NCBI RefSeq assembly: GCF_021869535.1
Contig: NW_026262679.1
Location: forward strand, 41,106,001 to 41,170,000
Source of the DNA: Mytilus californianus
Taxonomy: Eukaryota
Length of the DNA: 64,000 bases
Reading direction: 5' to 3'
Position numbers and translations under genes: made by a program. Under the pieces are notes generated by a model. That model made no database searches and was not told the origin of the DNA. It worked only from the letters and a program-made list of their open reading frames with translations. Of the stretch, positions 1,568-57,767 are shown in pieces; within the stretch, counting starts at the first letter, position 1, and the number at the start of each line of letters is the position of its first letter.

Positions 1568-2253
1568 TACGGAAGCCCATTTAGGACCTCCAAAAATATA
1601 TATTTGAATTCGATATCACGAATTAAAATTGTTTTCATGAATTGTAGAATTCGTTATCACAGTTTAAATTCGTGATAACGGATTAAAAACGTGATAACGA
1701 ATTGTATATTTCGTAATCAAGGATTAAATTCTATCTCACGAATGCGTAAAATTTGTTATCACAGGCTTTTTGGTGATTCACGATTACTGATTAAATTCTT
1801 TATCACAGATTTTTGTAATTCGTGATAACGGTTTAAAATCGTTATAACAAATTGTATAATTCGTAATAACGAATTAAATTCGTGATAACTATTTCTGCGA
1901 ATTCGTGATAACGAATTTAATCCGTTATCACGAATAACATAAAAATTGTGATAACTATTTCTACAAATTCATGATAACGAATTCAATCCGTTATAACGAT
2001 TTATACAATTCGTTATCACGATACATAGAATTCGCTATTACGATTTTTAACCCGTTATCACGAATTACAAAAAAATGTGATAACGAATTAAATTCGTAAT
2101 TATGAATTACAAAAACTGTTATAACTAATTCCGCAAATTCGTTATCGCGAATTTAATCTGTTATAACGAATTATTCAATTCGTGATAACGATTTGAATTC
2201 GTGATTTCGAATTCAAATATATATTTTTGGGAAGTCCTAAATGGGCGTCCGTA
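1568..2253. mobile_element. Non-autonomous MITE/foldback-like element with ~55-bp TIRs and internal TCGTGATAACGAATT-type repeats
   Basis: Left end TACGGAAGCCCATTTAGGACCTCCAAAAATATATATTTGAATTCG is the near reverse complement of the right end CGAATTCAAATATATATTTTTGGGAAGTCCTAAATGGGCGTCCGTA; outer TA could be a TSD; interior is built from many GTGATAAC/GTTATCAC units in both orientations. Confidence 0.85.
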
Positions 2254-4951: not shown

Positions 4952-5060
4952 ATATATATATATATAATGATATATTGAATATACACTGTCAAAAAATTAA
5001 TAATAATATTCTGATCTAATTTTTTTTTCCAATTCTATTGCAGAAATGTTTACAAGCTAT

Positions 5061-5353
5061 TTATTTGCACCTGTCCTAAGTCAGGAACCTGATGTTCAGT
5101 GGTTGTCGTTTGTCGATGTGGTTCATAAGTGTTTCTCGTTTCTCGTTTTTTTATATAGATTAGACCGTTGGTTTTCCTGTTTGAATGGTTTTACACTAGT
5201 CATTTTTGGGGCCCTTTATAGCTTACTGTTCGGTGTGAGCCAAGGCTCCATGTTGAAGGCCGTACTTTGACCTATAATGGTTAACTTTTACAAATTGTGA
5301 CTTGGATGGAGAGTTGTCTCATTGGCACTCATACCACATCTTTTTATATCTAT
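5061..5353 (-). mobile_element. Short high-copy interspersed repeat (GATGTGGTATGAGTGCCAATGAGACAACTCTCCATCCAAG family)
   Basis: Absent from the paralogue (about 54083 reads AGCTAT|ATAGGAAA); no clear TSD; related copies or fragments near 28860, 30680, 32665 and 41855. Confidence 0.8.
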
Positions 5354-5512
5354 ATAGGAAATTTAGATGTAAAACGACAGAAGCACTATTTTAAATGTTC
5401 ACAAAAGCACACAAACTAATTACATGAACCATTCTCGAGATACTAAAATAGTTGATGACCTATGTCATTGATATGGAAATAACCTTGTCATTACGAAATA
5501 GGAGACATATGG

Positions 5513-5513
5513 C

Positions 5514-5560
<47 letters not shown>
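5513..5560. repeat. (GATT)n microsatellite
   Basis: About 12 tandem GATT units; degenerate counterpart at about 54265-54305. Confidence 0.95.
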
Positions 5561-5561
<1 letters not shown>

Positions 5562-7464
5562 ACAAGGTTAGAAATAGAAGGAAAATCAAATATGATTGTA
5601 AATACTCCAAATAAATAAAATCTGTAAAGGTTTTTCACCCATCATCTCCTTTTATTCATTTTTGAATAGTTTTTTTTTTCTTATTTCAAGGATAAATTTG
5701 AACATGACTTCAGGAGACTACTCATTTCTTATTTTTAGAACTTTTTTGTGACATGTTGAATCTATAAAAAAAAGACTGTCATTTGAACATTCAGAGCATG
5801 AACTACAGAAAGTCTGAAATGGTTCTTGTTCTTCTTTTAACCTGAAATGGTCAGGATTTTTCATATTTTTTGTGAGCTTTTAGGACTTGACCAAAACCTC
5901 ATGTCCTATAAACCAATGAAATTAATTTTACTACTGTAGATTTAAGGACTTCGTCTGACGTAAAATTTGCTCTGATAAGGAATATCGTTCGTTTTTATGG
6001 TTTTATGATTCAGTTTGTTAGTCAAATAAATAAAAGATAAGTAATAAAATGCGTTCATCTTGAAAAAAATACATTCTAAAAAATGAATACATAAAAATTA
6101 TGCCTAACATATATCATACCCATTAAATTTTGATCTTATCTCTTCCAGTTAAAAGTCAATGATGTATAAACAACATCACGTATGCCCTTAGTGTGCGTTT
6201 AACGTTTTAAAAAAAGATGAGCAAACCCAATCTTTATAAAGCAGTAACAAAGTAAAAAGACGAATATGTTGATTTTCTTACTCTTTTATGTAGTTCTATT
6301 GCATATGCAAAATCAGTAAAATTCCAGTCAAAAATAAGGTACTGAAAATTCATAGCTATTCTACATAATGTAGTGATTTACACACACAATTTTTTAATAT
6401 AAAGTTGTTGCACATGTATGTCACAAAATAGACATCGTCATGTCTTTAAGGTTTAACTTGAAAACTTTGTGGTCTTCTTACAAACTGGTCATGACGACGA
6501 AATAAGTCGATGTTACGTTTCTGTTATACCATTATTTGTTCATGTACAGCTAAATCATCATTATGTGGATCTTGATAAAGAAAATGAAAACAATATGATT
6601 TATTGCTCACATTTTGATCAAATCTGAGAGGACAGATTATTTTGTATTTTTACAAATTCAAAACTCAGATTCCAACTTTCTCGAAAAATACAAATTTTAC
6701 TTTCATGCTTTTGAATTATAAAACTGCCTCATATCTTTTTGCATCTTTGACTTTCAAACTATTTTTTTTTATAACACCTATATAGATCAATCCAGAAAAT
6801 GGATCAAACTATAGAATCTGGTTCATAAGTTAAATGACAAGCGACTCATTTCACAGAAATTCTTACGAGAAAAACATACATGCAAGTCATGAACATTTCA
6901 GTATAGCTAACAATCAGTTTCAGTCGTATGATATTTTGTGAAAAAAGCCCCTGGTTGTACGATAAACATTGGAAAACAATCCTGTGCACAAGTAAAGAAC
7001 AATTATTTTAGGTCAAAATATTCAACTGTCATTTTGACTTTTATCAGTTGTTGTTTGGTTTATTTTATTCTTTGGAAGTTGTGTTGCACCTTTCAGATTT
7101 GGAGGTTTAACCATTGATTGGCTAATTCGTCATTTTCCCTAAAAAGCACTATCCAACATTATTTTGTTTCATCATTGGATAACCAATATAATAGGGAAAT
7201 ATTTTATGTTTGATTTACCATTTGCCTTTAGACATGAAATAGGTATGTGTCCTTTGTTGACACCCGTAAGGTGACATATAAATAATCACTCTCGCGGTTT
7301 GGTTCTTTGGTTGATAGTTCTATCATTTGCACTCACCACATCTCCCTATTCTTTTGACACACTTTAGTGTACATTATAATCATCTATTATATCAAAATGG
7401 CATTTTAATTTCATGTAACAACATATTAGGGAATGTCATTAAATTATTCTATACTAACTACCCA

Positions 7465-7520
7465 TCATGGTAAAATGTGCGAAAGCGTCTTAGTTTGGAC
7501 ATCAAGAATCGGTAAAGGCA
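7465..7520 (-). CDS. Ig-TM receptor A, terminal coding exon (VPLPILDVQTKTLSHILP*)
   Basis: Acceptor ...aacatttatag, phase 1, about 100-nt intron from the TM exon; frame and stop conserved in the paralogue at 56168-56223, with a synonymous TCG/TCC change. Confidence 0.7.
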
Positions 7521-7621
7521 CTATAAATGTTAAAGTTAAATTCGTTTTATTGGTTTTCGTTTTCAATTAATTCTTCAATTAAATCTCAGTAAAATGCAAT
7601 GACTAAGAAAATGCCAATTAC

Positions 7622-7780
7622 CTTCTATCTTGCTCAACATTCTTCTTTGGTCCACCTGACGTTTTCTTCTACAGATCTTCACGAACACTAGCAATGTCAA
7701 GAAGCCCAAAACGGTCCCAATTGCTATGATACCAGCAATCATTGTAACCTTTGATGGTCTATTACTTTCAGCAGACTGGT
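7622..7780 (-). CDS. Ig-TM receptor A, transmembrane exon (DQSAESNRPSKVTMIAGIIAIGTVLGFLTLLVFVKICRRKRQ...KIE)
   Basis: ttcatttccag acceptor and G|gtaatt donor, 159 nt, phase 1-1; hydrophobic helix followed by a basic stop-transfer motif; conserved with in-frame indels at 56325-56474. Confidence 0.85.
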
Positions 7781-9151
7781 CTGGAAATGAAATTGAATCA
7801 AATTGTCGTAAATTGTTGCATTTCTATTGTTATAGAAAAGACTGTAAACATAATGATGTTTTTTTTTATTATTTTTTGTCCATTGTATAATCAAAGACAC
7901 ATTTTTATCATCCTTATTATTTAATTATAAAAAAAACGTTATAATAAATAACTGAAAACTTTGCATCATGTTTGCTAAGTTTGCCGTTTGACTGTTGCAT
8001 TACTATCTCGACCATTTTCTAAATTTAAAAACATAAAATGTAAAATACATGTATTTAGACCAAATCAAGGGTCCGTGTAACACTTATCAATTCAAAATTT
8101 TAAAAAGTTTTCAAATTTTAGATTTTTGGAATGTTAATCAAAGTTTTAGAATATCAAAATTCCAAATTTTTTAAATATTTTAATTTTTAAAATTTTCACC
8201 AAATAATTAAAATTTTTAAACTCTAAATATCGTTTTTAAATTTGATAGTTAGATATTTGATCAAACTTTAAAAGTACTAAACTTAACGTGCAGTTTTGAT
8301 TATTTCGTTTTTTGGAAGTTTGAATTTTTAAATTTTTGATTAAGATATCAAAAATAGATAACGGGCGAAAACAGGGGTACCTGTAAAGTGCGAAACGGAA
8401 TAAAAGCGGAACAAAACAAAACAAAACGAAATGAACAGTTACTGTTATACAAAAGTTAATGTGTCAAATAAAAACAGAGGCAGACAGTTGTAAGCAGTGA
8501 AAAATTGGAAAAGAAAAAAAATATTTCTCAAAAGCGGAGAATTCATTTTAAAACAAGAAACACGGCTCTGATTATGATCATTCTTAGTTAGGAATAAAAA
8601 GCACGAAATATATCAAATCATTTTTAATTGCAAAATAAATAATCTAAAGAAGAAGTCTTTTTTTTTTAAAACAAATTGGACATCAATTGCGATAACAGTA
8701 TCCTGAAATTTATAAGGTTTTGCATCTATTGAAAAAAAAAATATTTAAACCTATTTAAACCGACATCAAACAAGTTGATTTACTTTTTAAAAAAATCTCT
8801 AATATAAACTTAGCGTTTCAGATGAATAATTCAGAACCATTTGGTTTCCCCAGCGCCCATCATTTAGGAGTAACAGTGAAAATTGACCAAATCGCAGTAG
8901 GCCAAATAGTATGGTAGGGTTAATTGTGTTCATATTTTCTGCTGTACTTTAGGCAATAAAATGGCTCAAAACACGTGTATTTCCTCAAATTTTATTTAAT
9001 TTTTTTTGTTTTGCTTTACAACTTCTTAACATCTGCAATCATGTAGGTAGATGAAATCATTGAATATACATTTTGACCGATCATCTCAGTTAAAATTTAT
9101 CAACTATTTCGGTTGTTATAAATTGTTGGCCTTCAAATATTCGGCTTTTGA

Positions 9152-9193
9152 ACGTTCCCGATGAAGGTAGATCCAGAAAAGCGCTTCGGACGC
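9152..9193 (+). ncRNA. Minimal type I hammerhead-like motif, core mutated (CCGAUGA)
   Basis: ACGTTC CCGATGA AGGTAGATCCA GAAA AGCGCTTC GGACGC; U4>C in the catalytic core; same defect in the duplicate at 11751-11792. Confidence 0.55.
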
Positions 9194-9527
9194 ATGCAAT
9201 TTTTAACGTTTTGTTTTCATTTTTTATCGATTGCATGACGATCATATGTTGCTTTTTATCATTGATTTCAGTTCAAAGTATTGATACAGTAGGAATACTG
9301 AATTTATGGTGTCGCAATTAACGTTGTAATTTTCAGCGTGTAATGCGGGTAGCAGTGTAAAAAAGATATCAACCTCCCACATTCGAGGCTAGTGCAACGT
9401 TCATTGCGACACCATGAATTCAGTATTCCTACCGTACCAATACTTAGAACTGAAATCAATGACACAAGGCAATATATGATCGTCATGCAATCGATAAAAA
9501 ATGATAACAAAACGTTAAAAATTGCAT

Positions 9528-9569
9528 GCGTCCGAAGCGCTTTTCTGAATCTACCTTCATCAGGAACGC
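9528..9569 (-). ncRNA. Minimal type I hammerhead ribozyme motif with intact CUGAUGA/GAAA core
   Basis: Minus strand reads GCGUUC CUGAUGA AGGUAGAUUCA GAAA AGCGCU UC|GGACGC: 6-bp stem I, short stem II, self-complementary AAGCGCUU stem III, UUC cleavage triplet. Folded by eye only. Confidence 0.65.
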
Positions 9570-10737
9570 TCAAAGCCGAATATTTGAAGGCCAACAATTT
9601 ATAACAACTGAAATAGTTGATAAAAGGTTAAAGATGATCGTTCAAAATGTACATTCAATGATTTCATCTGCCGACATGATTGCAGATAGTAAGAAGTCGT
9701 AAAGCAAAAAAAAAAAAAGTGAAATCAAATTTGAGAGAATACACATGTATTGAGCCATTTTATTGCTTAAATTTCAGTAGAAAATATATACATACTCAAC
9801 CCTACCATACTATTTGGCCTACTGCGAGTTGGTCAGTATTCACTGTTACTTCTAAATGATGGGCGCTGGGGAAACCAAATAGTTCGGAATTATTCATCTG
9901 AAACGCTTAGCTTATGTTAGAGATTTTTTTAACCGTAAATCAACTTGTTTAATGCAGGTTTAAATAGGTTTAAAAATTTTTTTTCTCAATTGATGCAAAA
10001 CCTTAAAAATTTCAGGATACTGTTATCGCAATTGATGTCCCATTTGTTTAAAAAAAAAAAACCGACTTCTTCTCTAAATTATTTATTTTGCAATTAAGAA
10101 TGATTTGATATATTTCGTGCTTTTTATTCCTAACTAAGAATGATCATAATCAGAGCCGTGTTTCTTGTTTTAAAATGAATTCTCCGCTTTTGAGAAAAAA
10201 TTATTTTATTATCCAATTTTTCACTGCTTACAACTGTCTGCTTCTGTTTTTATTAACTACATTAACTTTTAAAAAATAGAAACTGTTCATTTCATTTCAT
10301 TTTCGTTTCGTTTCATTTTGTTTCGTTTCGTTCCGCTTTTATTCCATTTCGCACTTTACAGGTACCCCTGTTTTCGCCCGTTTTCTATTTTTGATATCTT
10401 GATCAAAATTCTGAAAAATCAAATTTTAAAAACGCGAAATAATCGAAACTGCCCGTTAAGTTTAGAACTTTTAAAGTTTGATCGAATATCTAAACTATCA
10501 AATTTAAAAACGATATTTAGAATTTTAAAATTTTAATTATTTGATGAAAATTTGAAATTTTGATATTTTAAAACTTTGATCAAAATTCCAAAAATCTAAA
10601 ACTTTTTTTAAATTTTGAATTGATAAGTGTTACACGGACCATCAATGTTTCCTGAAATGATGTTTCATCAAATGTCGTTAGGACGTTTGACTAAGATGTC
10701 CAATTTAGTATTAATGGAGTAAATAATAATTACTTAC

Positions 10738-11076
10738 CATTATTGGTAAGTACATGCAGCACATGTACAAAAGTAAGATTCACTTCGCACGTATCAAATC
10801 CATAGAATAATTTGTACGTCTTGTTAACATCTGTATCTGTCAGGTTGTGTATGACGAGAGTGTACGCATCTGATCCTATCACCTCGGTGAGTTTATTTTC
10901 GAAGTCGCTGTCAACATGTAATCCGTCATACATCAAACTTTGATGTTCAGTATTTAAGTCACTCCTAGTCCAACGACGTCCTATATCATGTGTAACTTCT
11001 GATACATTTGCTGTTATGTTTACATCTTCTCCAAACAACGGAGTCGGCTTAATTTCTAAGCTGTAGCATAACGCAC
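10738..11076 (-). CDS. Ig-TM receptor A, Ig-like exon copy 1 (GALCYSLEIKPTPLFGEDVNITANV...YGFDTCEVNLTFVHVLHVLTNNG)
   Basis: Acceptor tttctttccgttaaag, donor G|gtaagt, 339 nt, phase 1-1; Ig-like pattern (G-x-x-V-x-I, W, L-x-I-x-N-L-x-x-x-D-x-x-x-x-Y). Confidence 0.8.
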
Positions 11077-11390
11077 CTTTAACGGAAAGAAACATATCCT
11101 TATTCAGGACTTTTTTTACTATGGTACATTTTTATTTTTATTCAATAGGCTATTAAAATTTAATATTTAAATCAAGACAAGTAAATATGCAATAAATGTG
11201 CAACGACAATACGACAATGGTGAAAATGTGAGTAAAATAAAACATATTCCAAAGATACTGCACTTGTAATCCCATCTGATGCCTGATTCAATATATGCCC
11301 GATTCAAAATTTTTACCGGATTAAAACTTTTTTCATTTGATTCAATGTTTCCTGGTTCAGTCTAGATTTCAGAATTGTTTTACTCTAAAA

Positions 11391-13252
11391 TAAAATCTTT
11401 AATATAAGCTTAGCGTTTCAGATGAATAATTCAGAACTATTTGGTTTCCCCAGCGCCTATCATTTAGGAGTAACAGTGAAAACTGACCAACTCGCAGTAG
11501 GCCAAATAGTATGGTAGGGTTAGTTGTGTTTATATTTTCTGCTGTACTTTAGGCAATAAAATGGCTCAAAACACGTGTATTCCCTCAAATTTTATTTTAT
11601 TTTTTTTGTTTTGCTTTACAACTTCTTACCATCTGCAATTATGTCGGCAGATGAAATCATTGAACATACATTTTGAACGATCATCTCAGTTAAAATTTAT
11701 CAACTATTTCGGTTGTTATAAATTGTTGGCCTCAAATATTCGGCTTTTGAACGTTCCCGATGAAGGTAGATCCAGAAAAGCGCTTCGGACGCATGCAATT
11801 TTTAACGTTTTGTTTTCATTTTTTATCGATTGCATGACGATCATATGTTGCTTTTTATCATTGATTTCAGTTCAAAGTATTGATACAGTAGGAATACTGA
11901 ATTTATGGTGTCGCAATTAACGTTGTAATTTTCAGCGTGTAAAGCGGGTAGCAGTGTAAAAAAGATATCAACAACCTCCCACATTCGAGGCTAGTGCAAC
12001 GTTCATTGCGACACCATGAATTCAGTATTCCTACCGTACCAATACTTAGAACTGAAATCAATGATGCAAGGCAATATATGATCGTCATGCAATCGATAAA
12101 AAATGATAACAAAACGTTAAAAATTGCATGCGTCCGAAGCGCTTTTCTGAATCTAACTTCATCAGGAATGCTCAAAGCCGAATATTTGAAGGCCAACAAT
12201 TTATAACAACCGAAATAGTTGATAAAAGGTTAAAGATGATCGTTCAAAATGTACATTCAATGATTTCATCTGCCGACATGATTGCAGATAATAAGAAGTC
12301 GTAAAGCAAAAAAAAAAAAAAAATTGAAATTAAATTTGAGAGAATACACATGTATTTAGCCATTTTATTGCTTAAATTTCAGTAGAAAATATATACATAC
12401 TCAACCCTACCATACTAATTGGCCTACTGCGAGTTGGTCAGTATTCACTGTTACTTCTAAATGATTGGCGCTGGGGAAACCAAATAGTTTTGAATTATTC
12501 ATCTGAAACGCTAAGCTTATATTAGAGATTTTTTTAACCGTAAATCAACTTGTTTGAGGCAGGTTTAAATAGGTTTAAATTTATTTTTTTTTCTCAATTG
12601 ATGCAAAACTTTAAAAATTTCAGGATACTGTTATCGCAATTGATGTCCCATTTGTTTAAAAAAAAAAACCGACTTCTTCTTTAAATTATTTATTTTGCAA
12701 TTTAGAATGATTTGATATATTTCGTGCTTTTTATTCCTAACTAAGAATGATCATAATCAGAGCCGTGTTTCTTGTTTTAAAATGAATTCTCCGCTTTTGA
12801 GAAAAATTTATTTTGCTATCCAATTTTTCACTGCTTACAACTGTCTGCCTCTGTTTTTATTTTATACATTAACTTTTAAATAATAGTTACTGTTCATTTC
12901 ATTTCATTTTCGTTTCTGTTCGTTTTGTTTCGTTTCGTTCCGCTTTTATTCCATTTCGCACTTTACAGGTACCCCTGTTTTCGCCCGTTTTCTATTTTTG
13001 ATATCTTGATCAAAATTCTGAAAAATCAAACTTTCAAAAAGCGAAATAATCAAAACTGCCCGTTAAGTTTAGAACTTTTAAAGTTTGATCAAATATCTAA
13101 ACTATCAAATTTAAAAACGATATTTAGAATTTTATAATTTAATTATTTGATGAAAATTTGGAATTTTTAAATTTAAAACTTTGATCAAAATTCCAAAAAT
13201 CTAAAACTTGAAAACTTTTTTAAATTTTAAATTGATAAGAGTTACACGACCC
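11391..13252. mobile_element. Second, left-truncated copy of the foldback element
   Basis: Lacks the outer ~720 bp of the left arm; keeps the spacer, the full right arm and ATCAA at 13253-13257. Confidence 0.88.
12130..12171 (-). ncRNA. Hammerhead motif copy with intact core but weakened stems I and II
   Basis: Minus strand GCAUUC CUGAUGA AGUUAGAUUCA GAAA AGCGCU UC|GGACGC. Confidence 0.5.
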
Positions 13253-13349
13253 ATCAAGGTTTCCTGAAATGATGTTTCATCATATGTCGTTAGGACGTTT
13301 GACTAAGATGTTCAATTTAGTATTAATGGAGTAAATAATAATTACTTAC

Positions 13350-13691
13350 CATTATTGGTAAGTACATGCAGCACATGTACAAAAGTAAGATTCACTTCGC
13401 ACGTATCAAATCCATAGAACAATTTATACGTCTTGTTAACATCTGTATCTGTCAGGTTGTGTATGACGAGAGTGTACGCATCTGATCCTATCACCTCGGT
13501 GAGTTTATTTTCGAAGTCGCTGTCAACATGTAACCCGTCATACATCAAACTTTGATGTTCAGTATTTTTAAAGTCACTCCTAGTCCAACGACGTCCTATA
13601 TCATGTGTAACTTCTGATACATTTGCTGTTATGTTTACATCTTCTCCAAACAACGGAGTCGGCTTAATTTCTAAGCTGTAGCATAACGCAC
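13350..13691 (-). CDS. Ig-TM receptor A, Ig-like exon copy 2
   Basis: Same splice sites as copy 1, 342 nt; by eye differs by three synonymous changes and one in-frame 3-nt indel (DLN vs DFKN). Confidence 0.8.
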
Positions 13692-14020
13692 CTTCAACGG
13701 AAAGAAACATATCCTTATTCAGGACTTTTTTTACTATGGTACATTCTTATTTTTATTCAATGGGCTATTAAAATTTAATATTTAAATCAAGAAAAGTAAA
13801 TATGCAATAAATGTGCAACGACAATAGGACAATGGTGAAAATGTGAGTAAAATAAAACTTATTCCAAAGATACTGCACTTGTAATCCCATCTGATGCCTG
13901 ATTCAATATATGCGCGATTCATTTTTTACCAGATTAAAACTTTTTCATTTGATTCAATGTTTCCTGGTTCACTCTAGATTTCAGAATTGTTTTACTCTAA
14001 ATTCAGTGTTCCCGGTTAAG

Positions 14021-18412: not shown

Positions 18413-18690
18413 ACATCTTTTGGAACTGTGTATAGTGAAAATATCTTTGATAAAAAATTGTAGATTTAATTTACATAATGTTTGAAACTTCATTGTGAAG
18501 CTATCTCTATATACCATGATTAGCAAATACACACTTTGTCACTGTTTCTTTGTATTTATTCTCCAATTAAGAAATTTCGTAATCATGTTAGATCTGCAAA
18601 CGTTTTTGTTTTTTAGTCATTCGACATACAGAATGTATCGTTTAATTCAAGCCAATACCAAAGCACTTATGGTGCCCTTCTTGACGAATA

Positions 18691-19585
18691 GTCCACAAGA
18701 AGCGATACCGACCCAATTGTAATGTAAAAAAATCAACAGCAGTGATACCGATCCAATTGTAATGTAAACATGGTAAATAGTTCACCAGAAGCGATTCCGA
18801 CCTAGCTGTAATGTGAAAAAGATCACCAGAATCGATAATGACACAATTGTAATATTAAAAGTTCACCAGCAGCGATACCGACCAAATACTAATGTAAAAA
18901 GTTCCCCAGAAGCGATACCGACCCAGTTGTAATGTAAAAAAATCACCAGCAGCGATTATGACTCAAATGTAATATAAAAAGATCACCATCAGCAATATCG
19001 AACTAACAGTAATGTAAAAAGTTCACCAGCACCGAGACCGACCTAATAATAATGTACAAAATTCAAAATCAGCGATACCAACCCAATAGTAATGTAAAAA
19101 GTTCACAAGCGGCGATACCAACCAAATAGTAATGTAAATAGTTCACTAGCAGCGATACCGATCCAATTGTAATGTAAATAGTTCCCCAGAAGCAATACCG
19201 ACCCCGTTGTAATGTAAAAAAAAAATTCACCAGAAGCGATAATGACCCAATTGTAATGTAAACAGTTCATTAGCTGCAATACCGACCAAATTGTAATGTT
19301 CAAAAGTTCACCAGCAGCGATACCGACCCAATAGTAATGTAAAAAGTTCACTAGTAGCGATATCGAATCGATAGTAATATAAACAGTTCCCCAGTCGCGA
19401 TACCGAACCAGTTGTAGTGTAAAAAAAGTTCACCAGCACCGATACCGACATAATAATGTAAAACGTTCACCAGCAGCGATACAGAAATAATAGTAATGTA
19501 AAAAATTTACACCAGCAGCTATACCGAACCAATAGTAATGTTAAAAGTTTATCAGCAGCGAAACTGACCCAATTGTAATATTAAT
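18691..19585 (+). repeat. Minisatellite of 22 degenerate ~40-bp units (TTCACCAGCAGCGATACCGACCCAATAGTAATGTAAAAAG)
   Basis: Units counted by eye; head-to-tail with no unique spacers. Confidence 0.95.
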
Positions 19586-20775: not shown

Positions 20776-21243
20776 TTGTGCATCTTGCCGATCTGAGGAG
20801 TCGAGCCATTTACAACTTATGTTTACAATTTGTTCTAGTCTTGAGCTGTAACATCACTGTCCCAAGTTAGGAAGTTGACCGCTCACAAACCCGCGCGCCA
20901 CATTCTTTATGTGCCTATTTAAATCAAATCCAAGATTATTCATTGTATTACATTAAATACCTCACCTTCATAAATTTAGATATCAGTCAACTCGCTGCAT
21001 TGTTCAACCGGAAACCAGCCAGAAAACAGAACTATACCCCTGTGACAACCTCTCCCACCTGACGCAAACGCGCCATAACCCTTCATCTTTTTTCCGGTTC
21101 CATGGTTCATGCTGCACGCTTTTGAGAAGGAAAACGTTTTTTGCTTAACCACGTTGTTTCTTAATAGAAAAATTATAGTTATATTATTTTGTAATATCAT
21201 TTTGTATTATTTATTTGTTTTATTCGGATAATTTATCTGTATA

Positions 21244-25872: not shown

Positions 25873-26803
25873 CAGTCAGAGGTCCCGCCCCCTCCCCTTC
25901 ATCCCCCTTGGTGCCTGGCAATTCAAGGAACAAATGATGAAGGTTTATGGCGCGCATGCGTCAGGTGGGGGAGGTTGTCACAAGGGTACAGTTCTTTTTT
26001 CTGGCTGGTTTCCAGTTGAATAATGCAGCGAGTGGACTGATATCTAAATTTATGAAGGTGAGTATTTAATTTACAAAACTAAATTTTAATTCTAAAAACA
26101 CTTTCATTCCCACGATCCGATGAGTATATGAGTTAATGTTTGGTAATGATGACAATAAAATTGTTTCACTATATAATCTATTTAGTTTACTACTTACAAG
26201 GTTTTTTATATTATGATTTTATGGCAAAATGCAAGTTTGCAAGCAGATCTCTTGATTTGTTGAGTGCCAGATATAAATCAAATATATTTTTTTATTATCA
26301 ATCTACGTGTATAAAGGTTTATGACACACTTGTATTGTCAGTCATAAGATTGTGGTGCTTCCATTTTGGGAAATCAGAGACATTTCTTGCATAAATGTGG
26401 TTAAAAATAAAGCAATGCGATTTTTTTATGGGTGTATGAACATAAACACCAAACTTATTTCTTCATGAAGATAGTGACTAAGTGGACTGCAATTTAAAGC
26501 AATGGACAGCTGTGTTAAGACCATTGCCAAAATTTTATCAAATAGATGACGAAAAAGTGAACAAAGAATAATTTATGTGGTCATATATGTATAAAAAAAC
26601 TAGAAAAATGAAAGACGGGTGTTTTACAGTAATGGCAAAGTTTTAAGAATATAAACATTAATGCAACTGTAATATATCGTGAATTCAAAAGATATTCAAG
26701 GATATTTAATATTTAGCTTAGATTTATATAAAGATGAGTAGTTTAATAATTTGGCTTCAAAAATGTCAAACTAGATCGATAAACTGTTTAAAACCGAATT
26801 TAA

Positions 26804-39931: not shown

Positions 39932-40822
39932 GAATAAAAACTGAAGTTATAGGTCTTGGTAAATTTGTTTTATCAATAATTCTCACGACAGCTAATGGTT
40001 GCATATTGTATAACTGCTTTATTTGGTCATATTTAGTGGCAGTGTCATGTTGCCGCTCATGGCCTATTTTAGATTAGAACAATACATATTCATCTTTGTT
40101 GAGATTTTTTTTAAAGAATTCTAGCTTTTCTGTTTTACTTCGATCAGTGGAATAGCAAAGTGCACGTAAAAATAAGTTTATTAAAAATCAGTTCAGATAC
40201 TAAGTAAGCACTGTACTCTTATATCGGTATGACGGACAACAAAACGTGGGTACAGCTAAAACAATAATATATTATACCGTATAAAACAAACGTAGATCAA
40301 AGAGGGCCTGCTTCTTCTGAATTTAAATCACTAATAGGATCAGAATTCCAAAGTACACAAAACTTGCTTGAACTAGAATATAAACAACTCTATATAAATC
40401 AAACTGTTCCTACTTCCTTTGCTGTTTCATAATCTGAAGGTTTATTGGTATTCTATTTCCCTTTTTTTATTTATACATTTTCTAAAAAGCTCAAAATGCT
40501 GTGATAAGTTATAGGGGATATACAATTATCATAATCATAGCATTTAGACAAGATGCATATTTTCATCAAAGTGTTGACAAAACTCGAAATCGAATGTTCA
40601 ACTCCAATTGGTGCAAGAAACCGTCTTAAACTAGCATTAAGCACTGTGAATTTTAGATGGAGGACAGCAATAACAACGTTTTTGTTTTCTTTTTTTTTTT
40701 GTCAATAAAGTGGTTGTAAGGATTTTGTATAATGAATTAATGACCATATATCTTCTTTTCTATCAAAGAATATTCTGATTGAAATAGCCTATAAAAATGA
40801 AAACAACACTTTATAAATTTCA

Positions 40823-41210
40823 TGCGTCCGAAGCGCTTTTCTAGATTAACTGCATCAGGAACGCACAAAGCCGAATGTTTGAAAGCCGAGGATTTATAAG
40901 AATCGATACAGCTGAAGAGCTATATGACCACAAAGGATCTGAAGATAATTACAAATCCATCTAGATGTAAGTCAACTTTGCCAGAGGTAGTTGAAACCGT
41001 AGTTTCTTAATAATTTATAAATTTATAAACGGACAATTTAAGAACGATTTGTTGTAAATCATTTCAGTATCGAAGCGCTGACTACTGAGCTGATGATACC
41101 ATTGGGACTGATAGCCCACCAGCAGCGGTATCGACCCAGTGCTGTAAAAAAAATTTAAAACACTTTGCGTCCGAATCACTTTTCTTTATTTACCTTCATC
41201 AGGAACGCTC
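40823..41210 (-). mobile_element. Retrozyme-like monomer: two direct hammerhead motifs 343 nt apart
   Basis: TGCGTCCG...CATCAGGAACGC at 40823-40864 and 41166-41208, same family as the foldback hammerheads; non-coding interior; both motifs carry mutations. Confidence 0.7.
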
Positions 41211-41449
41211 AAACTTAACTATAACTATAATACTTTTAAACAAACTCTTTTCATTAAAATTTGACATTAGACAAAACAAAACATAGATATGATTAAAATG
41301 CTGAATGTACTGATTTATGGAAAACGGATAATTGGTGTCAATAAAATTAAGTTTTAGACAATTGTCTAAATCTCTGACATTTTACATCTAGGTAATCGTA
41401 TTTATAAACAGTTTCTTCTGGTGAACATAGAAGTGATAGCATATATATA

Positions 41450-42850
41450 TGTACACTTTGTGTATAAACTGTTTGAAACATGACACTATATAATTCAGAC
41501 TTCCTACTTGGTTGACGTATAGATAAAGCATTGCTGTTAGAATCATGACACTATATAGTGAAGCCTATACTTGGTTGACGTAAATGTACACTTTGTGTGC
41601 ACGGTTGTGCTTCTAGAAATGACATTGCAGTTTGAAACATGTCACTATACAGTGAAGATTCTACACTTGTATACCTTGTGTGCACGGTTTTGAAGGTAAA
41701 CTTGATATTGTTGTTTGAATCATGATTATACAGTGAAGACAGAATCGTGACACTATATATGTAAGACTTCCTACTTGGTTGACATATAGACTTGGCATTG
41801 CTGTTAGAATCATGACACAAATAGTGAAGTCTCCGTACTTGGTTGACGTATATAGATATAGGAAGATGTGGTATGAGTGCCAATGAGACAACTCTCCATC
41901 CAAGTTACAATTTATAAAAGTAAACCATCATAGGTCAAGGTACGGCCTTCAACACGGAGCATTGGCTCACACCGAACAGCAAGCTATAAAGGGCCCCAAA
42001 AAATTACTAGTGTAAAACCATTCAAACAGAAAAACCAACGGTCTAATGTATATAAAAACGAGAATCGAGAAACACGTATGAACTACATAAACAGACGACA
42101 ACTACTGTAATCAGATTCCTGACTTAGGACAGGTGCAAACATTTGCAGCGGGATTAAACGTTTTAATGGTACCAAACCTTCTCTATAAAATATCAATTGG
42201 AAGGTTTAACTCAATCAAAAAACGTAAATTAACACACAATGAACGAATAAATTTGACCTGTGACACCTGAATGCAAATACACAGTTAATAAAAAATTACA
42301 AGGGATAAATAATTAAAGTCAAAAGTAAATAATCAGGTATAAACAAAAGTTAAAGTATGATATCACTGAAAAATGTCAAACAATTTTTAGAAAATCATCA
42401 CTTTTGAAGAAACCTGCGTCATATTATACACAGGTAAATGAAAATAATTTTGTTGTTAAGTATACTTCTTCTTCTGTGTGTATAAAATCTTCCGTTTAGG
42501 AATACCAAGAAATTTCTTTAATATCAATAAAACTAATCTAACACTTGGTACATATGGGGTGAATATCAACAATAAAACTATACAATTAGTGCTAGATAAA
42601 ACAGCATCTAAGGAAAAATGAAATAATGTTGATGTTATATGTACACTTTGTGTGCACGGTTGTGACATAGACTTGACATTGTTGTTAGAATCATGACACT
42701 ATAGAGTGAAAACTTTATACTTGGTTGACGTAAATGTGCACTTTGCGTGAACGGTTGTGCATATAGACTTGACATTGTTGTTAGAATCATGACAATATAT
42801 AGTGAAGACTCTATACTTGGTTTACAAAAAATGTACACTTTGTGTGCACA
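41450..42850. repeat. Degenerate minisatellite (about 60-95-bp units) split by a ~785-bp interspersed-repeat insertion (about 41852-42636)
   Basis: Recurrent TGTACACTTTGTGTGCACGG, TTAGAATCATGACAC and TACTTGGTTGACG motifs on both sides of the insert. Confidence 0.8.
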
Positions 42851-53400: not shown

Positions 53401-56167
53401 CTATATGTATTTCAAATACAGCCCAGCATATCTTCAAGACATTTTAAAAAGAGTAACATGTCTGATTGCAACATTAATTTCATAACAAATCCAACTGCAG
53501 AAATTTTAGGCTTTATGAGAGTTTCCACATCACTTAATAGAAAGAAACAAGTTTATCTAAAAATCTCAGCTGTACTGATATAATAGAAATATCTGAATAT
53601 CCTAATTTAACACTAATATATGGACAAGGCTAAATATATATATATATATATGCCCTTGCCATTTATATCCAGTAAAAAAACAAATAGAAAAATTGTGGAC
53701 TTTAACGGAATAAAAAATCCTCTCTCTGATACTGTAAAGGTTTAATTTACATTTTAGTTTAAATTTTGCAATTTCTTTCACAAAACCAGTTCACAAGGTT
53801 ATACGTTTGAATTCTTCTTTTCCTTGATTCTAATATTCCTTAGAGATCAAAATACGGTCAAGAATTTTTGTGATTTTATTTGCAAAAAAATATGCAAAAA
53901 TAAACTCCTGGTAAATATTTTAACTTTGGCTTTAATTCAAGTATAATACCAAATTACAAACTGTGGTATTTTCAGACCATTATAAAACACTTTTTTGATA
54001 TATTGAATATACACTGTCAAAAAATAAATAATAATATTCAGATCTATTTTTTTCCCAATTATATTGCAGAAATGTTTACAAGCTATATAGGAAATTTAGA
54101 TGTAAAATTTAGAAGCACTATCTTAAATGTTCACAAAAGCACACACACTTTTCATTGTACATGAAACTAATAACTTGAACTATTCTCAAGATACAAAATG
54201 TTTGATGTCCTATGTCATTGATGTGGAAATAACTTTGTCATTACGAAATAGGAGACATATGGCTGATTGATTGATTGATTGGTCTATTGGTTGATTGATT
54301 GATTGAATTATGGTTAAAAATAGAAGGAAATTCAATAATGATTCTAAATACTCTAAATAAATAAAATCTGTACAGGTTTTGGACCCATCGTCTCCTTTTA
54401 TTTATTTTCAAATAGTTTTTCTTTCTTATTTCAAGGATAAATTTGAACATGACTTTGGTATTCTAAGACATCAGTAGAATAATCATTTCTTGTTTTTGGA
54501 ACTTTTTTTGTTATGTTGAATCTATAAATAAAAGACTGTCATTTGAACATTCAGTGCATAAACTACAAAAAGTCTGAAATGGTTCTTGTTCTTTTTTTAA
54601 CCTGAAATTGTCAGGATTTTTTAAAATTTTTATGACCTTTCAGGACGTAACCAAAAACTCATGTCCTATAAACCAATGAAATTAATTTTACTAATGTATA
54701 TTTAAGGACTTCGTCTAACGTAAAATTTGCTCTAATAAGGAATATCGTTCGTTTTTATGATTTTTTGTTAGTCAAATAAATAAAAGATATATATAAAATG
54801 CGTTATAAAATACATACTGAAAAATAAATATATAAAAATTATGCTTTACATATATAATACCCATTAAAGTTTGATCTTATTTCTTCCAGTTAAAAGTCAA
54901 TGATGTATAAACAACATCATGTATGCCCTTATTGTGCAGTAACAAAGTAAAAAGACGAATATATTGATTGTCTTACTCTTTTATGTAGTTCTATTGCATA
55001 TTCAAAATCTGATTCAGTAAAATTCCATTGTCATAAATAAGGCACTGGCTATCATAGCTATTCTACTTAATGTATTTATTGATTAATACACAAATTTTTA
55101 ATATATAACGTTGCTGCACATGTACGTCACAAAAAAAACATCATCATGACTTTAGGATTTTACTTGAACACTTTGTGGTCTTCTCACAAACTGGCCATGA
55201 CGACGAAATTAGTCGATGTTGCGGTTCTGTTACCATTATTTGTTCATGTACAACTAAATCCTCATTAAGTGAATCTTAAAATAGAAAATGAAAACAATAT
55301 AATTTATTGCACACATTTTGATCAAATCTGAGTGGTCAGATTATTTTGTATTTTTACAAATTCAAAACTAAGATTCTAACTGTCTCGAAAAATACAAATT
55401 TGACTTTCATGCTTTTGAATCATAAAATCTGGCCTCATATCTTTTTGCATCTTTGACATTCAAACTATTTTTTTGTAATACCTATATAGATCAATCCAGA
55501 AAATGGATCAAACTATAGAATCCGGTTCATAAATTAAATTAAAAGACAAGATACTCATTTCACAGAAAAACGAGAAAAAATACATGTCATGAACATTTCA
55601 GTATACATGTAGCTAACAATCAGTTTCAGTCGTAAGATATTTTGTGAAAAGAGCCCCTGGTTGTACGACAAACATTGGAAACATTCCTTTGCACAATTGA
55701 AGAACACTTATTTTAGGTCAAAATATTCAACTATCATTTTGTCTTTTATCAGTTGTTGTTGGGTTTATTTTATTCTTTGGTAGTTGTGTTGCATCTTTCA
55801 GATTTGGAGGTTTAACCATTGATTGGCTAATTCGACATTTTCCCTAAAAAGCACTATCCAACATTATGTTTTTTCGATCATTGGATAACCAATATAATAC
55901 GGAATTATTTTATGTTTGCTTTACCATTTGCCTTTAGACATGAAATAGGTATGTGTCCTTTGTTGACACCCGTAAGGTGACATATAAATAATCACTCTCG
56001 CGGTTTGGTTCTTTGGTTGATAGTTCTATCATTTGCATTCAACACATCTCCCTATTATTTTGACACACTTTAGTGTACATTATAATCATCTGTATCAAAA
56101 TTGCATTTTAATTTCATGTAAAAATATATTAGGGAATGTCACTAAATTATACTATACTAACTACCCA

Positions 56168-56223
56168 TCATGGTAAAATGTGGGAAAGCGTCTTAGTTTG
56201 GACACCAAGAATCGGTAAAGGCG
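56168..56223 (-). CDS. Ig-TM receptor B, terminal coding exon (APLPILGVQTKTLSHILP*)
   Basis: Same length, splice site and stop as 7465-7520. Confidence 0.65.
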
Positions 56224-56324
56224 CTATAAATGTTGGAGTTAAATTCGTTTTATTGGTTTTCGTTTTCAATTAATTATTTAATAAAATCTCAGTAAAATGC
56301 AATGACTAAGAAAATGTCAATTAC

Positions 56325-56474
56325 CTTCTATCTTGTTCAACATTCTTCTTTGGTGGCGTTTTCTTCTACAGATCTTCACGACAAGCAATACCAAGAAGCC
56401 TAAAACAGTCCCAATTGCTATGATAACAGCAATCATTGTAACCTTTGATGGTCTACTATTTTCAGCAGACTTGT
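56325..56474 (-). CDS. Ig-TM receptor B, transmembrane exon
   Basis: 150 nt, phase 1-1; KVTMIAVIIAIGTVLGFLVLLVVKICRRKRH. Confidence 0.8.
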
Positions 56475-56490
56475 CTGGAAATGAAATAGA

Positions 56491-57054
56491 ACAAGCTTTT
56501 TGAGAGTATTGCATATGGCAAGACATAGTCCCCTACCGGTAAAAATTCATTGTACTGGAACAAAATGCTTACTTGATCTGTATATTGTCATGGCGTAAAC
56601 TATATAATAAATATCAAGACAATATCTTCAAGCATGACGAAAAAAGTGTGGAAAACTGATTATTTAAGTGAATTTTCTAAGTCTAAGGACCATTACTCTG
56701 CACAAAATCATCCGACCGGAACAAAATTCGACCTTGATCTGTAACTTGTCATGATAAAACTATATACCAATTATCAAATCAATATCTTCAAGCATGACGA
56801 AAAAAGTGAGGAAAACTGATTATTTGAGTGAATTTTTTAACTCCAAGGACCATAACTCTGCACAAAATCATCAGACCGGAACAAGATTCGCATTTGGTCT
56901 GTAAACTTGTCATGATAAAACAATACACCAAATATCAAATCAATATCTTTAAGCACAAAGAAAAAAGTGTGGAAAACTGATTTGCCGGACTGACGGATGG
57001 ACAGACAGACAGACAGACAGACGGAGTGCAAACCTAAAGTCCCCTTCGACTTCG
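56491..57054 (+). mobile_element. Helentron-like element with three ~160-bp repeats and a (CAGA)n tract
   Basis: Absent at the paralogous position (about 7797-7806); ends in GACAGACAGACGGAGTGCAAACC...CCCCTTCGACTTCG. Confidence 0.65.
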
Positions 57055-57422
57055 TCGTAGATTGTTGCATTTCTATTGTTATAGAAAAGACTGTAAACAT
57101 AATAATGCATTTTTTATTATTATTTGTCCATTGTATAATCATAGACACATTTTTACCATCCTTACTTTTTAACAAATAAAAACACCCGTTATAAATAACT
57201 GAAAACTTTGCATTATTTTGCTATGTTTGCCATTTGAATGTTGCATTACTATCTAGACCGTTTTTTTAAACTAAAAACATAAAATGTTATATGCATGTAT
57301 TTAGACCAAATCCAAGTTTCCATAAAATGATGTTTCATCAAATGTGTATCTCTTTTCAATCGTAAGAACGTTTGACTGAGATGTCCATTTTAGTATCAAT
57401 GGAGTAAATAATAATTATTTAC

Positions 57423-57767
57423 CATTATTGGTAAGTACAAGTACATGTACAAAAGTAAGATTCACTTCACACGTATCAAATCCAAAGTACAATTTGTACG
57501 TCTTATTAACATCTGTATCTGTCAGATTGTGTATGGTGAGAGTGAACACATCTGATCCTATCAGCTCGGTGAATTTATCTTCAAAGTCGCTGTCAACATG
57601 TAACCCGTCATACATCAAATCATATTCATGGTGACGTTCAGCGTTTAACTCACTCCTAGTCCAACGACGTCCTATAGCATGTGTTACTTCCGATACTGTT
57701 GCTGTTATGTTCACATCTTCTCCAAACAACAGAGTCGGCTTAATTTCTATGCTGCAGCATAACACAC
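57423..57767 (-). CDS. Ig-TM receptor B, Ig-like exon
   Basis: 345 nt, phase 1-1, open frame, clearly homologous to 10738-11076 with in-frame indels. Confidence 0.8.

What the first reader, a model, noticed from the sequence alone, without database searches (positions are those of the whole stretch)
8069..10640. 2.57-kb foldback transposon carrying two back-to-back hammerhead ribozyme motifs
Seen directly: about 1.25-kb inverted arms around a ~65-bp spacer, an ATCAA TSD, an empty site in the paralogue, and a minimal type I hammerhead motif in each arm (9152-9193 plus, 9528-9569 minus). Established: minimal hammerheads with a palindromic stem III occur in Penelope-like elements and retrozymes and can cleave as dimers. 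Inference: a DNA-type foldback element has captured a retrozyme segment in mirror image, so either strand yields a long dsRNA containing a ribozyme and its antisense. I do not know a described family with this combination.
Basis: partly seen in the sequence, partly recalled or inferred. Interest (0 to 1): 0.78.

Follow-up and report, generated by a model that had tools for sequence, protein, structure and literature searches.

The report
Mussel foldback transposon with retrozyme pieces
This is a shortened copy of a gene-less, hairpin-shaped cut-and-paste transposon of a mussel genome whose two arms each carry a 127-base piece, with a variant hammerhead motif, taken from the mussel's small "retrozyme" repeats. 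It is a real and tidy chimera of two mobile elements, and the ribozyme piece is most likely a passenger.

Summary
The structure is real. Window 8070-10640 has two inverted arms, a 6-bp target duplication (ATCAAG, not 5 bp) and an empty site in a paralogue. It is not a one-off: its 24-nt terminus occurs 371 times in the genome. Full-length relatives are about 4.4-kb foldbacks with 6-bp duplications at six of six sites checked and no long ORF. The window copy lost about 1.8 kb of centre, and its "spacer" is extra right-arm sequence. A later tandem duplication made a second, partial copy at 11375-13252.

The hammerhead claim is partly right. No Rfam model matches. The motif is nevertheless homologous to the ribozyme of a 350-bp tandem repeat family, whose exact 36-mer occurs 1,552 times. 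That family is kin to the published Mytilus retrozyme Mg353. The variant keeps the core and helices I and III, but helix II is two pairs above an A.A mismatch. The window's left-arm copy also has a core mutation (U4 to C).

Only about 127 bp of the retrozyme lies in each arm, so capture is supported. The transposase and superfamily are unknown. Earlier notes of this scan record other foldback and retrozyme families in this genome, but not this combination.

The parts
8064..8069 (.). Left copy of the 6-bp target-site duplication, ATCAAG.
   Evidence: It matches 13253-13258 exactly and 10641-10646 at 5 of 6 positions.
8070..10640 (.). Internally deleted copy (2,571 bp) of a non-autonomous foldback DNA transposon. 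The termini read GGTCCGTGTAACAC...GTGTTACACGGACC.
   Evidence: Full-length relatives are L031 1-4398, L032 1-4445 and L035 1-3870.
8070..9318 (+). Left arm. It corresponds to positions 1-1270 of the full-length family member L031.
   Evidence: 87.8% identity over 1,283 aligned columns.
9333..10640 (-). Right arm.
   Evidence: 88.7% identity over 1,355 aligned columns.
9120..9235 (+). Retrozyme-derived segment of the left arm (approximate limits).
   Evidence: The homologous block in L031 is 1054-1177, and it matches positions 221-347 of the 350-bp retrozyme unit at 80-84% identity.
9152..9193 (+). Variant type I hammerhead-like motif of the left arm. The core is mutated (CCGAUGA, U4 to C).
9487..9600 (-). 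Retrozyme-derived segment of the right arm (approximate limits).
9528..9569 (-). Variant type I hammerhead-like motif of the right arm. The core CUGAUGA...GAAA...C17 is intact. Helix II is A.A plus G-C plus G.U.
10641..10646 (.). Right copy of the target-site duplication, ATCAAT (one change from ATCAAG).
11375..13252 (.). Second, partial copy of the same element. It lacks the first ~705 bp of the left arm. It arose by a tandem duplication of 8775-11389 onto 11375-14001.
   Evidence: 95.8% identity over 2,634 columns. The flank at 13253-13258 reads ATCAAG.
57303..57320 (.). Empty target site in the paralogous segment (GACCAAATCCAAGTTTCC).
   Evidence: alignment A2.
40790..41215 (-). Two decayed units of the 350-bp retrozyme-type repeat that is the source family of the captured segment. 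They are not part of the transposon.

Best explanation
Window 8070-10640 is one old, internally deleted copy of a non-autonomous foldback (very long TIR) cut-and-paste DNA transposon family of a Mytilus-like mussel. The family has roughly 200-370 copies. Full-length members are about 4.4 kb, with arms of about 2.2 kb. The termini read GGTCCGTG...CACGGACC. Integration makes a 6-bp target duplication, so a DDE-type transposase supplied in trans is inferred; neither the enzyme nor its superfamily was found.

Before the family spread, its arm sequence took in a ~127-bp fragment of a 350-bp non-LTR retrozyme repeat. The likely route is a nested retrozyme insertion followed by truncation, or template switching during gap repair. 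Full-length copies also hold a fragment of the canonical retrozyme in the opposite orientation. Because the arms mirror each other, the fragment and its variant type I hammerhead motif now occur once on each strand.

In the foldback the motif is most likely a passenger without function. The window's left-arm copy has a mutated invariant core base. The monomer fold is marginal. In a read-through transcript the motif pairs with its own antisense inside a ~1.25-kb hairpin.

Shown: architecture, TSD, empty site, copy number, homology to retrozymes. Inferred: the transposase, the route and direction of capture, and the lack of function.
For: Architecture and family.
- Inverted arms.
- More than 100 scored matches out of 3,424 first-look candidates in the own genome.
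- The 24-nt terminus occurs 182 times forward and 189 times reverse, against 0 in the control. Paired termini lie 152 bp to about 4.2 kb apart.
- Full-length foldbacks are L031 (4,398 bp), L032 (4,445 bp) and L035 (3,870 bp).

Transposition.
- 6-bp TSDs are seen at six of six sites: CCCAAG, AAAAAT, CTCATA/C, GAAAAG, TACGAG, ATCAAG.
- The paralogue holds an empty site.
- The 4.4-kb copy checked (L031) has no ORF of 100 aa or more inside the element, and two further loci of the family (L033, L034) have none of 120 aa or more.

Retrozyme origin.
- The motif block is shared with a 350-bp tandem repeat: 4.3 units at 95% in L049 and 80-84% identity over about 127 bp.
- The motif is identical except for one loop base.
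- The exact 36-mer occurs 1,552 times in the genome, against 18 for the foldback-type variant.
- That repeat is 69-87% identical to repeats carrying canonical Rfam-positive hammerheads. Those hammerheads equal the published M. galloprovincialis Mg353 ribozyme (PMC7229834 supplement).

Structure of the motif.
- Helices I and III stay paired between the canonical and variant forms: 96% of cells paired, and two pairs changed on both sides.

Passenger status.
- U4 to C in the left arm.
- The monomer hammerhead fold is -2.0 to +0.4 kcal/mol, against an MFE of -5.7 to -8.3.
- The hairpin is -589 kcal/mol, z = -56, with the motif buried.
Against: - No transposase or autonomous copy was found.
- The GG..CC termini fit neither IS3EU/GingerRoot, which has TA..TA (PMC10045372), nor, from memory, Polinton.
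- The motif block lies in the best-conserved part of the arm (0.96 majority fraction against 0.92-0.95 nearby). Weak selection on it is therefore not excluded.
- A retrozyme hammerhead with a mismatch at the base of helix II does self-cleave in axolotl (PMC7229834). The variant may therefore be active.
- The direction of transfer rests on parsimony only.
- There are no RNA data.
Confidence: 0.72

Rival explanations
1. The foldback is built so that transcription of either strand gives a long dsRNA containing an active hammerhead and its antisense. The ribozyme cleaves, as a monomer or a dimer, and this matters for the element's biology.
For: The family consensus keeps CUGAUGA, GAAA, C17, a 6-bp helix I and the palindromic AAGCGCUU helix III. 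Predicted dimers form the 8-bp intermolecular helix III. The motif block is the best-conserved part of the arm. A natural retrozyme ribozyme with a mismatch at the base of helix II is active (PMC7229834).
Against: No Rfam hammerhead hit at E<=10. Helix II is two pairs plus an A.A mismatch. The window's left-arm copy, L008 and the duplicated copy all carry U4 to C. Several full-length copies (L032, L035) carry the motif in only one arm. The hairpin buries the motif. There is no expression evidence.
Confidence: 0.1
2. It is a hairpin-RNA source. Transcripts of the few hundred foldback copies fold into long dsRNA. Dicer or piRNA processing of the retrozyme-derived part yields small RNAs that silence the 1,500+ copy retrozyme family in trans.
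For: There is a near-perfect hairpin. The arms share 80-84% identity with the retrozyme over about 127 bp, including a conserved 36-mer that differs by one base. Further retrozyme pieces sit in full-length copies.
Against: There are no transcription or small-RNA data. The shared block is short. Capture of repeat fragments by transposons is common and needs no function.
Confidence: 0.07
3. It is not a DNA transposon. It is a Penelope-like or retrozyme-type retroelement whose inverted 5'-truncated copy arrangement imitates a foldback.
For: Penelope-like elements carry hammerheads and are known (from memory, and per PMC8557442 as listed) to form inverted arrangements. Many genomic matches cover one arm only.
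Against: The one-arm matches continue into a longer foldback. The TSD is constantly 6 bp. Both termini are identical inverted sequences. Derivatives keep both termini down to 152 bp. The variant hammerhead points from the terminus towards the centre, not as in a head-to-head pair of 5'-truncated copies. No RT ORF was seen.
Confidence: 0.04
4. It is a one-off local inverted duplication, or the hammerhead resemblance is chance.
For: None remains after testing.
Against: The terminus occurs 371 times with a control of 0. There are TSDs and an empty site. The motif block is homologous to an abundant retrozyme family.
Confidence: 0.01

Closest known systems
Foldback / long-TIR non-autonomous DNA transposons (Drosophila FB and Galileo-type elements)
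   Same: Very long inverted arms make up almost the whole element. It has no coding capacity. Copy length is very heterogeneous through internal deletions. The TSD has a fixed length. An empty site shows true insertion.
   Different: The TSD is 6 bp, not 9 bp (FB) or 7 bp (Galileo); those two values are from memory. The arms are not built of tandem subrepeats: only weak 8-10-bp AT-rich periodicity appears in the terminal ~150 bp. The arms carry retrozyme-derived hammerhead fragments. The transposase is unknown.
Metazoan non-LTR retrozymes (Mytilus galloprovincialis Mg353; Cervera and de la Pena 2020, PMC7229834)
   Same: The captured block is homologous to the ribozyme-bearing part of a 350-bp tandem repeat of this family. 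Both have type I topology and a 2-bp helix III capped by the palindromic GCGC.
   Different: The foldback holds only about 127 of 350 bp, not a tandem unit. It has one sense motif per strand, so the double cleavage needed to make a circle is not possible in the window copy. The variant has A.A at positions 10.1/11.1 and a 2-bp helix II, and Rfam RF00163 does not detect it.
IS3EU/GingerRoot and Polinton (eukaryotic integrase-like DDE elements with 6-bp TSDs)
   Same: The TSD is 6 bp (PMC10045372). Earlier notes of this scan report IS3EU-like elements with long, foldback-like ends in the same genome.
   Different: IS3EU/GingerRoot termini are TA..TA, occasionally TG..CA, whereas here they are GG..CC. 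No transposase, integrase or polymerase gene was found.
Bivalve transposons that carry satellite or tandem-repeat cargo (Helentron-borne satDNA in Crassostrea gigas, PMC7492417)
   Same: A non-autonomous bivalve transposon has incorporated pieces of another repeat family and spreads them.
   Different: The carrier differs: here it has a TSD and is a foldback, whereas Helentrons move by rolling circle. The cargo is a ribozyme-bearing retroelement fragment, not a satellite array.

Membership tests
Hammerhead ribozyme, type I (Rfam RF00163 Hammerhead_1) | Conserved core C3-U4-G5-A6-N7-G8-A9 ... G12-A13-A14 and a cleavable H17 | tested here: inconclusive
   The family consensus and the window's right arm have CUGAUGA, GAAA and C17. 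The window's left arm, its duplicate and L008 have CCGAUGA, that is U4 to C.
Hammerhead ribozyme, type I (Rfam RF00163 Hammerhead_1) | Helix I open-ended and base-paired; helix III closed with A15.1-U16.1 | tested here: met
   Helix I has 6 bp. Helix III is AA/UU over a GCGC loop. 96% of cells are paired across 28 distinct canonical, retrozyme-variant and foldback motifs, and two pairs are changed on both sides.
Hammerhead ribozyme, type I (Rfam RF00163 Hammerhead_1) | Helix II closed by a 10.1-11.1 Watson-Crick pair (usually G-C) | tested here: not met
   There is an A.A mismatch at 10.1/11.1, and only two G-C pairs follow (G-C plus G.U in the window's right arm).
Hammerhead ribozyme, type I (Rfam RF00163 Hammerhead_1) | Score above the Rfam gathering threshold | tested here: not met
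   There is no hammerhead hit at E<=10 on 6 kb, on 521 nt, or on the source retrozyme arrays. The same model finds 14 canonical motifs elsewhere in the genome.
Hammerhead ribozyme, type I (Rfam RF00163 Hammerhead_1) | Self-cleavage | not testable with these tools
   This needs in vitro transcription.
Metazoan non-LTR retrozyme | Tandem units of ~170-400 bp, each with a type I hammerhead | tested here: not met
   The foldback arm holds only ~127 bp of the 350-bp unit. The source family itself meets the feature (L049: period 350, 4.3 copies, 95%).
Metazoan non-LTR retrozyme | Expression as circular RNA | not testable with these tools
   No reads could be laid.
Foldback-type non-autonomous DNA transposon | Long inverted arms reaching the termini, present in many copies | tested here: met
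Foldback-type non-autonomous DNA transposon | TSD of constant length, and an empty site | tested here: met
   6 bp at six of six sites. The empty paralogous site is shown.
Foldback-type non-autonomous DNA transposon | An autonomous partner with the same termini that encodes a transposase | tested here: inconclusive
   L031 has no ORF of 100 aa or more inside the element, and L033 and L034 have none of 120 aa or more. The ORFs inside L036 have no Pfam match. The 6-10-kb paired-termini candidates could not be fetched.
IS3EU / GingerRoot | 6-bp TSD | tested here: met
   The criterion is from PMC10045372.
IS3EU / GingerRoot | TA..TA (or TG..CA) termini | tested here: not met
   The termini are GG..CC in all copies.
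Penelope-like element | RT plus GIY-YIG ORF, or a derivative with TSDs of variable length | tested here: not met
   No such ORF was seen, and the TSD is constantly 6 bp.

The most novel reading that the evidence does not exclude
The foldback family works as a natural hairpin-RNA trap for retrozymes. Its few hundred copies are transcribed into long dsRNA that contains the retrozyme ribozyme block in sense and antisense, and the resulting small RNAs keep the 1,500+ copy circular-RNA retrozyme family in check.

Alternatively, in full-length copies the strand that carries both a variant and a canonical hammerhead in the same sense (seen in L031, about 2.2 kb apart) could release a rod-like RNA. 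That would give a DNA transposon a retrozyme-like RNA phase.
Probability: 0.07. Interest if true: 0.7.

Novelty: new variant of a known kind. Interest (0 to 1): 0.4.

Why it matters
- It documents a clean chimera of two different kinds of mobile element in a mussel: a cut-and-paste foldback transposon that has taken up ribozyme-bearing pieces of retrozymes and multiplied them.
- Hammerhead-like motifs found in animal genomes need not mark retroelements. DNA transposons can spread them too.
- It exposes an abundant retrozyme subfamily (1,552 exact copies of the 36-mer) whose hammerhead has a non-canonical helix II that Rfam models miss. That variant is a cheap target for a cleavage assay.
- If the hairpin transcripts were processed into small RNAs, the family would link transposon structure to the control of circular-RNA elements. 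Nothing here shows that.

Tried and rejected
- Rfam cmscan at E<=10 on 7000-13000, on 9100-9620 and on the retrozyme arrays gave no hammerhead family. The miRNA-family hits are artefacts of the long hairpin.
- My first idea was a ~1.3-kb monomer arranged head-to-head, as in a Penelope-like inverted pair. I dropped it when the 'inner ends' of the monomers proved to continue into a 4.4-kb foldback.
- I searched for an autonomous copy. L031 has no ORF of 100 aa or more inside the element, and L033 and L034 have none of 120 aa or more. Four ORFs inside L036 have no Pfam family apart from a sub-threshold ATE_N hit. L036 has no TSD and looks composite.
I did not try another route.
Only a local window-against-window BLAST in a script spanned them.
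- IS3EU was a lead from earlier scan notes. The TSD fits but the termini do not.
- The conservation profile of the arms shows only a slight excess at the motif block (0.96 against 0.92-0.95), which is not decisive.
- Literature searches for a foldback or DNA transposon carrying hammerheads found nothing relevant.
Full report
**1. Observation**

The sequence at 8070-10640 is a genuine inverted repeat. Gap-free blocks are 88-98% complementary, and a pairwise alignment of the arms runs from the termini to the centre. The element starts GGTCCGTGTAACAC and ends GTGTTACACGGACC.

The flanks read ATCAAG (8064-8069) and ATCAAT (10641-10646). A second, partial copy further right ends at 13252 and is followed by ATCAAG.

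A paralogous segment about 49 kb away is 84-87% identical to both flanks. At about 57303-57320 it reads GACCAAATCCAAGTTTCC with no element. That is an empty site.

**2. The family**

The element is not a one-off. The own genome (1.65 Gb) gave 117 scored matches out of 3,424 first-look candidates. The 24-nt terminus, allowing up to 2 mismatches, occurs 182 times forward and 189 times reverse, against 0 for the reversed control. Plus/minus pairs lie 152 bp to about 4.2 kb apart, and a few lie 6-10 kb apart.

Many matches seemed to cover one arm only, which first suggested a 1.3-kb monomer. However, the sequence beyond the 'inner end' is conserved between copies. Ten-kb extracts show full-length members of 4,398, 4,445 and 3,870 bp. 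Their arms pair from the termini to a ~480-nt centre.

Six insertion sites were checked and all have 6-bp duplications: CCCAAG, AAAAAT, CTCATA/CTCATC, GAAAAG, TACGAG and ATCAAG.

The 4.4-kb copy L031 has no ORF of 100 aa or more inside the element, and two further loci of the family (L033, L034) have none of 120 aa or more. The family is therefore a non-autonomous foldback-type DNA transposon.

The window copy matches L031 positions 1-1270 (left arm) and 1-1341 (right arm). It has therefore lost about 1.8 kb of centre. Its 'spacer' is only the ~70 bp by which the right arm is longer.

After insertion, the segment 8775-11389 was duplicated in tandem onto 11375-14001 at 95.8% identity. This produced the partial copy at 11375-13252.

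**3. The hammerhead motif**

Rfam's covariance models report no hammerhead at E<=10 on 6 kb, on 521 nt around the motifs, or on the source repeats. The same RF00163 model finds 14 canonical motifs elsewhere in the genome.

The family consensus reads GAGCGUUC CUGAUGA AGGUAGAUCCA GAAA AGCGCUU C GGACGC. Its features are:
- a 6-bp helix I;
- an intact core;
- a helix III of two A-U pairs over the palindromic GCGC;
- C17 at the cleavage position;
- a helix II of only two G-C pairs closed by an A.A mismatch.

In the window, the left-arm copy has U4 to C (CCGAUGA). The right-arm copy has a G.U in helix II.

**4. Origin of the motif**

A ~125-bp block around the motif also occurs at window 40790-41215. 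It lies outside any foldback, in two decayed units about 350 bp apart. In the genome this block belongs to a 350-bp tandem repeat, for example L049 with 4.3 units at 95% identity.

That repeat's motif differs from the foldback's by one loop-2 base. Its exact 36-mer occurs 1,552 times, often at ~352-bp spacing, whereas the foldback-type 36-mer occurs 18 times.

The repeat is 69-87% identical to repeats that carry canonical hammerheads. Those read GAGCGUCA CUGAUGA GUCU..AGAC GAAA CGCGCG UC UGGCGU. This is the ribozyme of the published Mytilus galloprovincialis retrozyme clone Mg353 (PMC7229834 supplement). That paper also reports about 5,000 type I hammerheads in 350-390-bp repeats in that mussel.

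The variant keeps helices I and III through changes on both sides: A-U to C-G at positions 2.1/1.1, and C-G to A-U at 15.2/16.2. Across 28 distinct motifs, 96% of cells are paired. These changes amount to one event per pair, so the support is modest.

The motif is therefore a true homologue of a retrozyme hammerhead, not a chance match.

Only positions 221-347 of the 350-bp unit lie in each foldback arm, at 80-84% identity. Two further pieces occur in full-length copies and are absent from the window copy:
- A fragment of ~70-100 bp with the canonical hammerhead lies in the opposite orientation in the left arm (L031 1448-1519; L012 1288-1331).
- A possible 83-bp piece lies near the centre.

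The retrozyme unit is homologous over its whole length to other retrozymes, while the foldback holds only fragments. Transfer from retrozyme to foldback is therefore the parsimonious direction. That direction is an inference.

**5. How it most likely works**

The shown facts fit cut-and-paste mobilisation by a transposase supplied in trans, with staggered 6-bp target cuts. Length heterogeneity would come from internal deletions.

The enzyme is unknown. IS3EU/GingerRoot and Polinton make 6-bp TSDs, but IS3EU/GingerRoot termini are TA..TA (PMC10045372), and here they are GG..CC. I leave the superfamily unassigned.

The ribozyme block is most likely a passenger, for four reasons:
- One window copy has a mutated invariant base.
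- Several full-length copies carry the block in one arm only.
- The monomer hammerhead fold is worth -2.0 to +0.4 kcal/mol, against alternative folds of -5.7 to -8.3.
- A transcript across the centre folds into a near-perfect hairpin (-589 kcal/mol, z = -56) in which the motif pairs with its antisense.

Three points argue against a firm 'dead' verdict:
- The variant is abundant and young in the retrozyme family.
- Dimers can form the 8-bp AAGCGCUU helix III.
- An axolotl retrozyme hammerhead with a U.U mismatch at the base of helix II still cleaves, and cleaves better as a dimer (PMC7229834).

The motif block is also the best-conserved part of the arm, though only slightly (0.96 against 0.92-0.95).

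**6. What could not be done**

There is therefore no evidence for or against transcription, cleavage or small RNAs. I worked beside those places afterwards and sent none of their letters to a search tool. One local script comparison within the window did span them.

The 6-10-kb candidates for an autonomous copy were therefore not examined.

**7. Comparison with what is known, and verdict**

The element works like a foldback or long-TIR non-autonomous DNA transposon and meets that kind's structural criteria.

It is not a retrozyme, because it holds only a fragment. Its motif fails two membership criteria of the canonical type I hammerhead: the 10.1-11.1 pair and the Rfam score.

Earlier notes of this scan report several other foldback families and other hammerhead retrozyme families in the same mussel genome. 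None reports this combination, and my literature searches found none either.

It is a new variant of a known kind and moderately interesting. The functional reading remains untested and is, on the present evidence, unlikely.

Noticed in passing
L049:1042-2539; L039-L048; G000-wide: There is an abundant 350-bp retrozyme-type tandem repeat whose type I hammerhead has an A.A mismatch at the base of a 2-bp helix II. The exact 36-mer occurs 1,552 times in the genome. Rfam RF00163 does not detect it. It may be an undescribed ribozyme variant of the mussel retrozymes.
   Followed up: partly
L031:1448-1519 (minus strand); L012:1288-1331: Full-length foldback copies carry, in the left arm only, a fragment with the canonical Mg353-type hammerhead, in the opposite orientation to the variant motif. 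In L031 one strand therefore has two same-sense hammerheads about 2.2 kb apart around the hairpin centre. L032 and L035 lack the variant block in the right arm.
   Followed up: partly
window 8775-11389 and 11375-14001: A tandem duplication of about 2.6 kb (95.8% identical) has one breakpoint inside the left arm of the transposon and the other in the flank. It is younger than the insertion.
   Followed up: yes
window 5000-8066 plus 10641-11235 versus 54028-57930: A segmental duplication of at least ~3.7 kb, 84-87% identical, lies about 49 kb apart. The far copy lacks the transposon and has its own ~560-bp insertion at 56491-57054.
   Followed up: partly
window 18687-19584: A 40-bp minisatellite array of roughly 20 units at 60-85% identity.
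   Followed up: no
window 1590-2231: A cluster of direct and inverted repeats built from AATTCGTGATAACG-like units (95-nt arms, 88% complementary). It may be another small foldback or MITE-like element.
   Followed up: no
window 5203-5356 and 41849-42002; 20961-21091 and 25932-26062: Two pairs of dispersed inverted repeats (154 nt at 94% and 131 nt at 92%). They are probably copies of other interspersed elements.
   Followed up: no
G000:C13:45287093-45287244: Two inverted termini of the family lie only 152 bp apart. This is a MITE-sized derivative that keeps little more than the ends.
   Followed up: no
L036:1-7906: Two inverted termini lie 7.9 kb apart without a TSD. About 3.8 kb of the interior is unrelated sequence with four ORFs of 132-236 aa that have no Pfam match. 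It is probably two elements or a rearranged composite.
   Followed up: partly
window 9233-9490: Rfam miRNA-precursor models (MIR8007, 75.6 bits; MIR5649) match the centre of the foldback far below their gathering scores. This is an artefact of the long hairpin, not a miRNA gene.
   Followed up: yes
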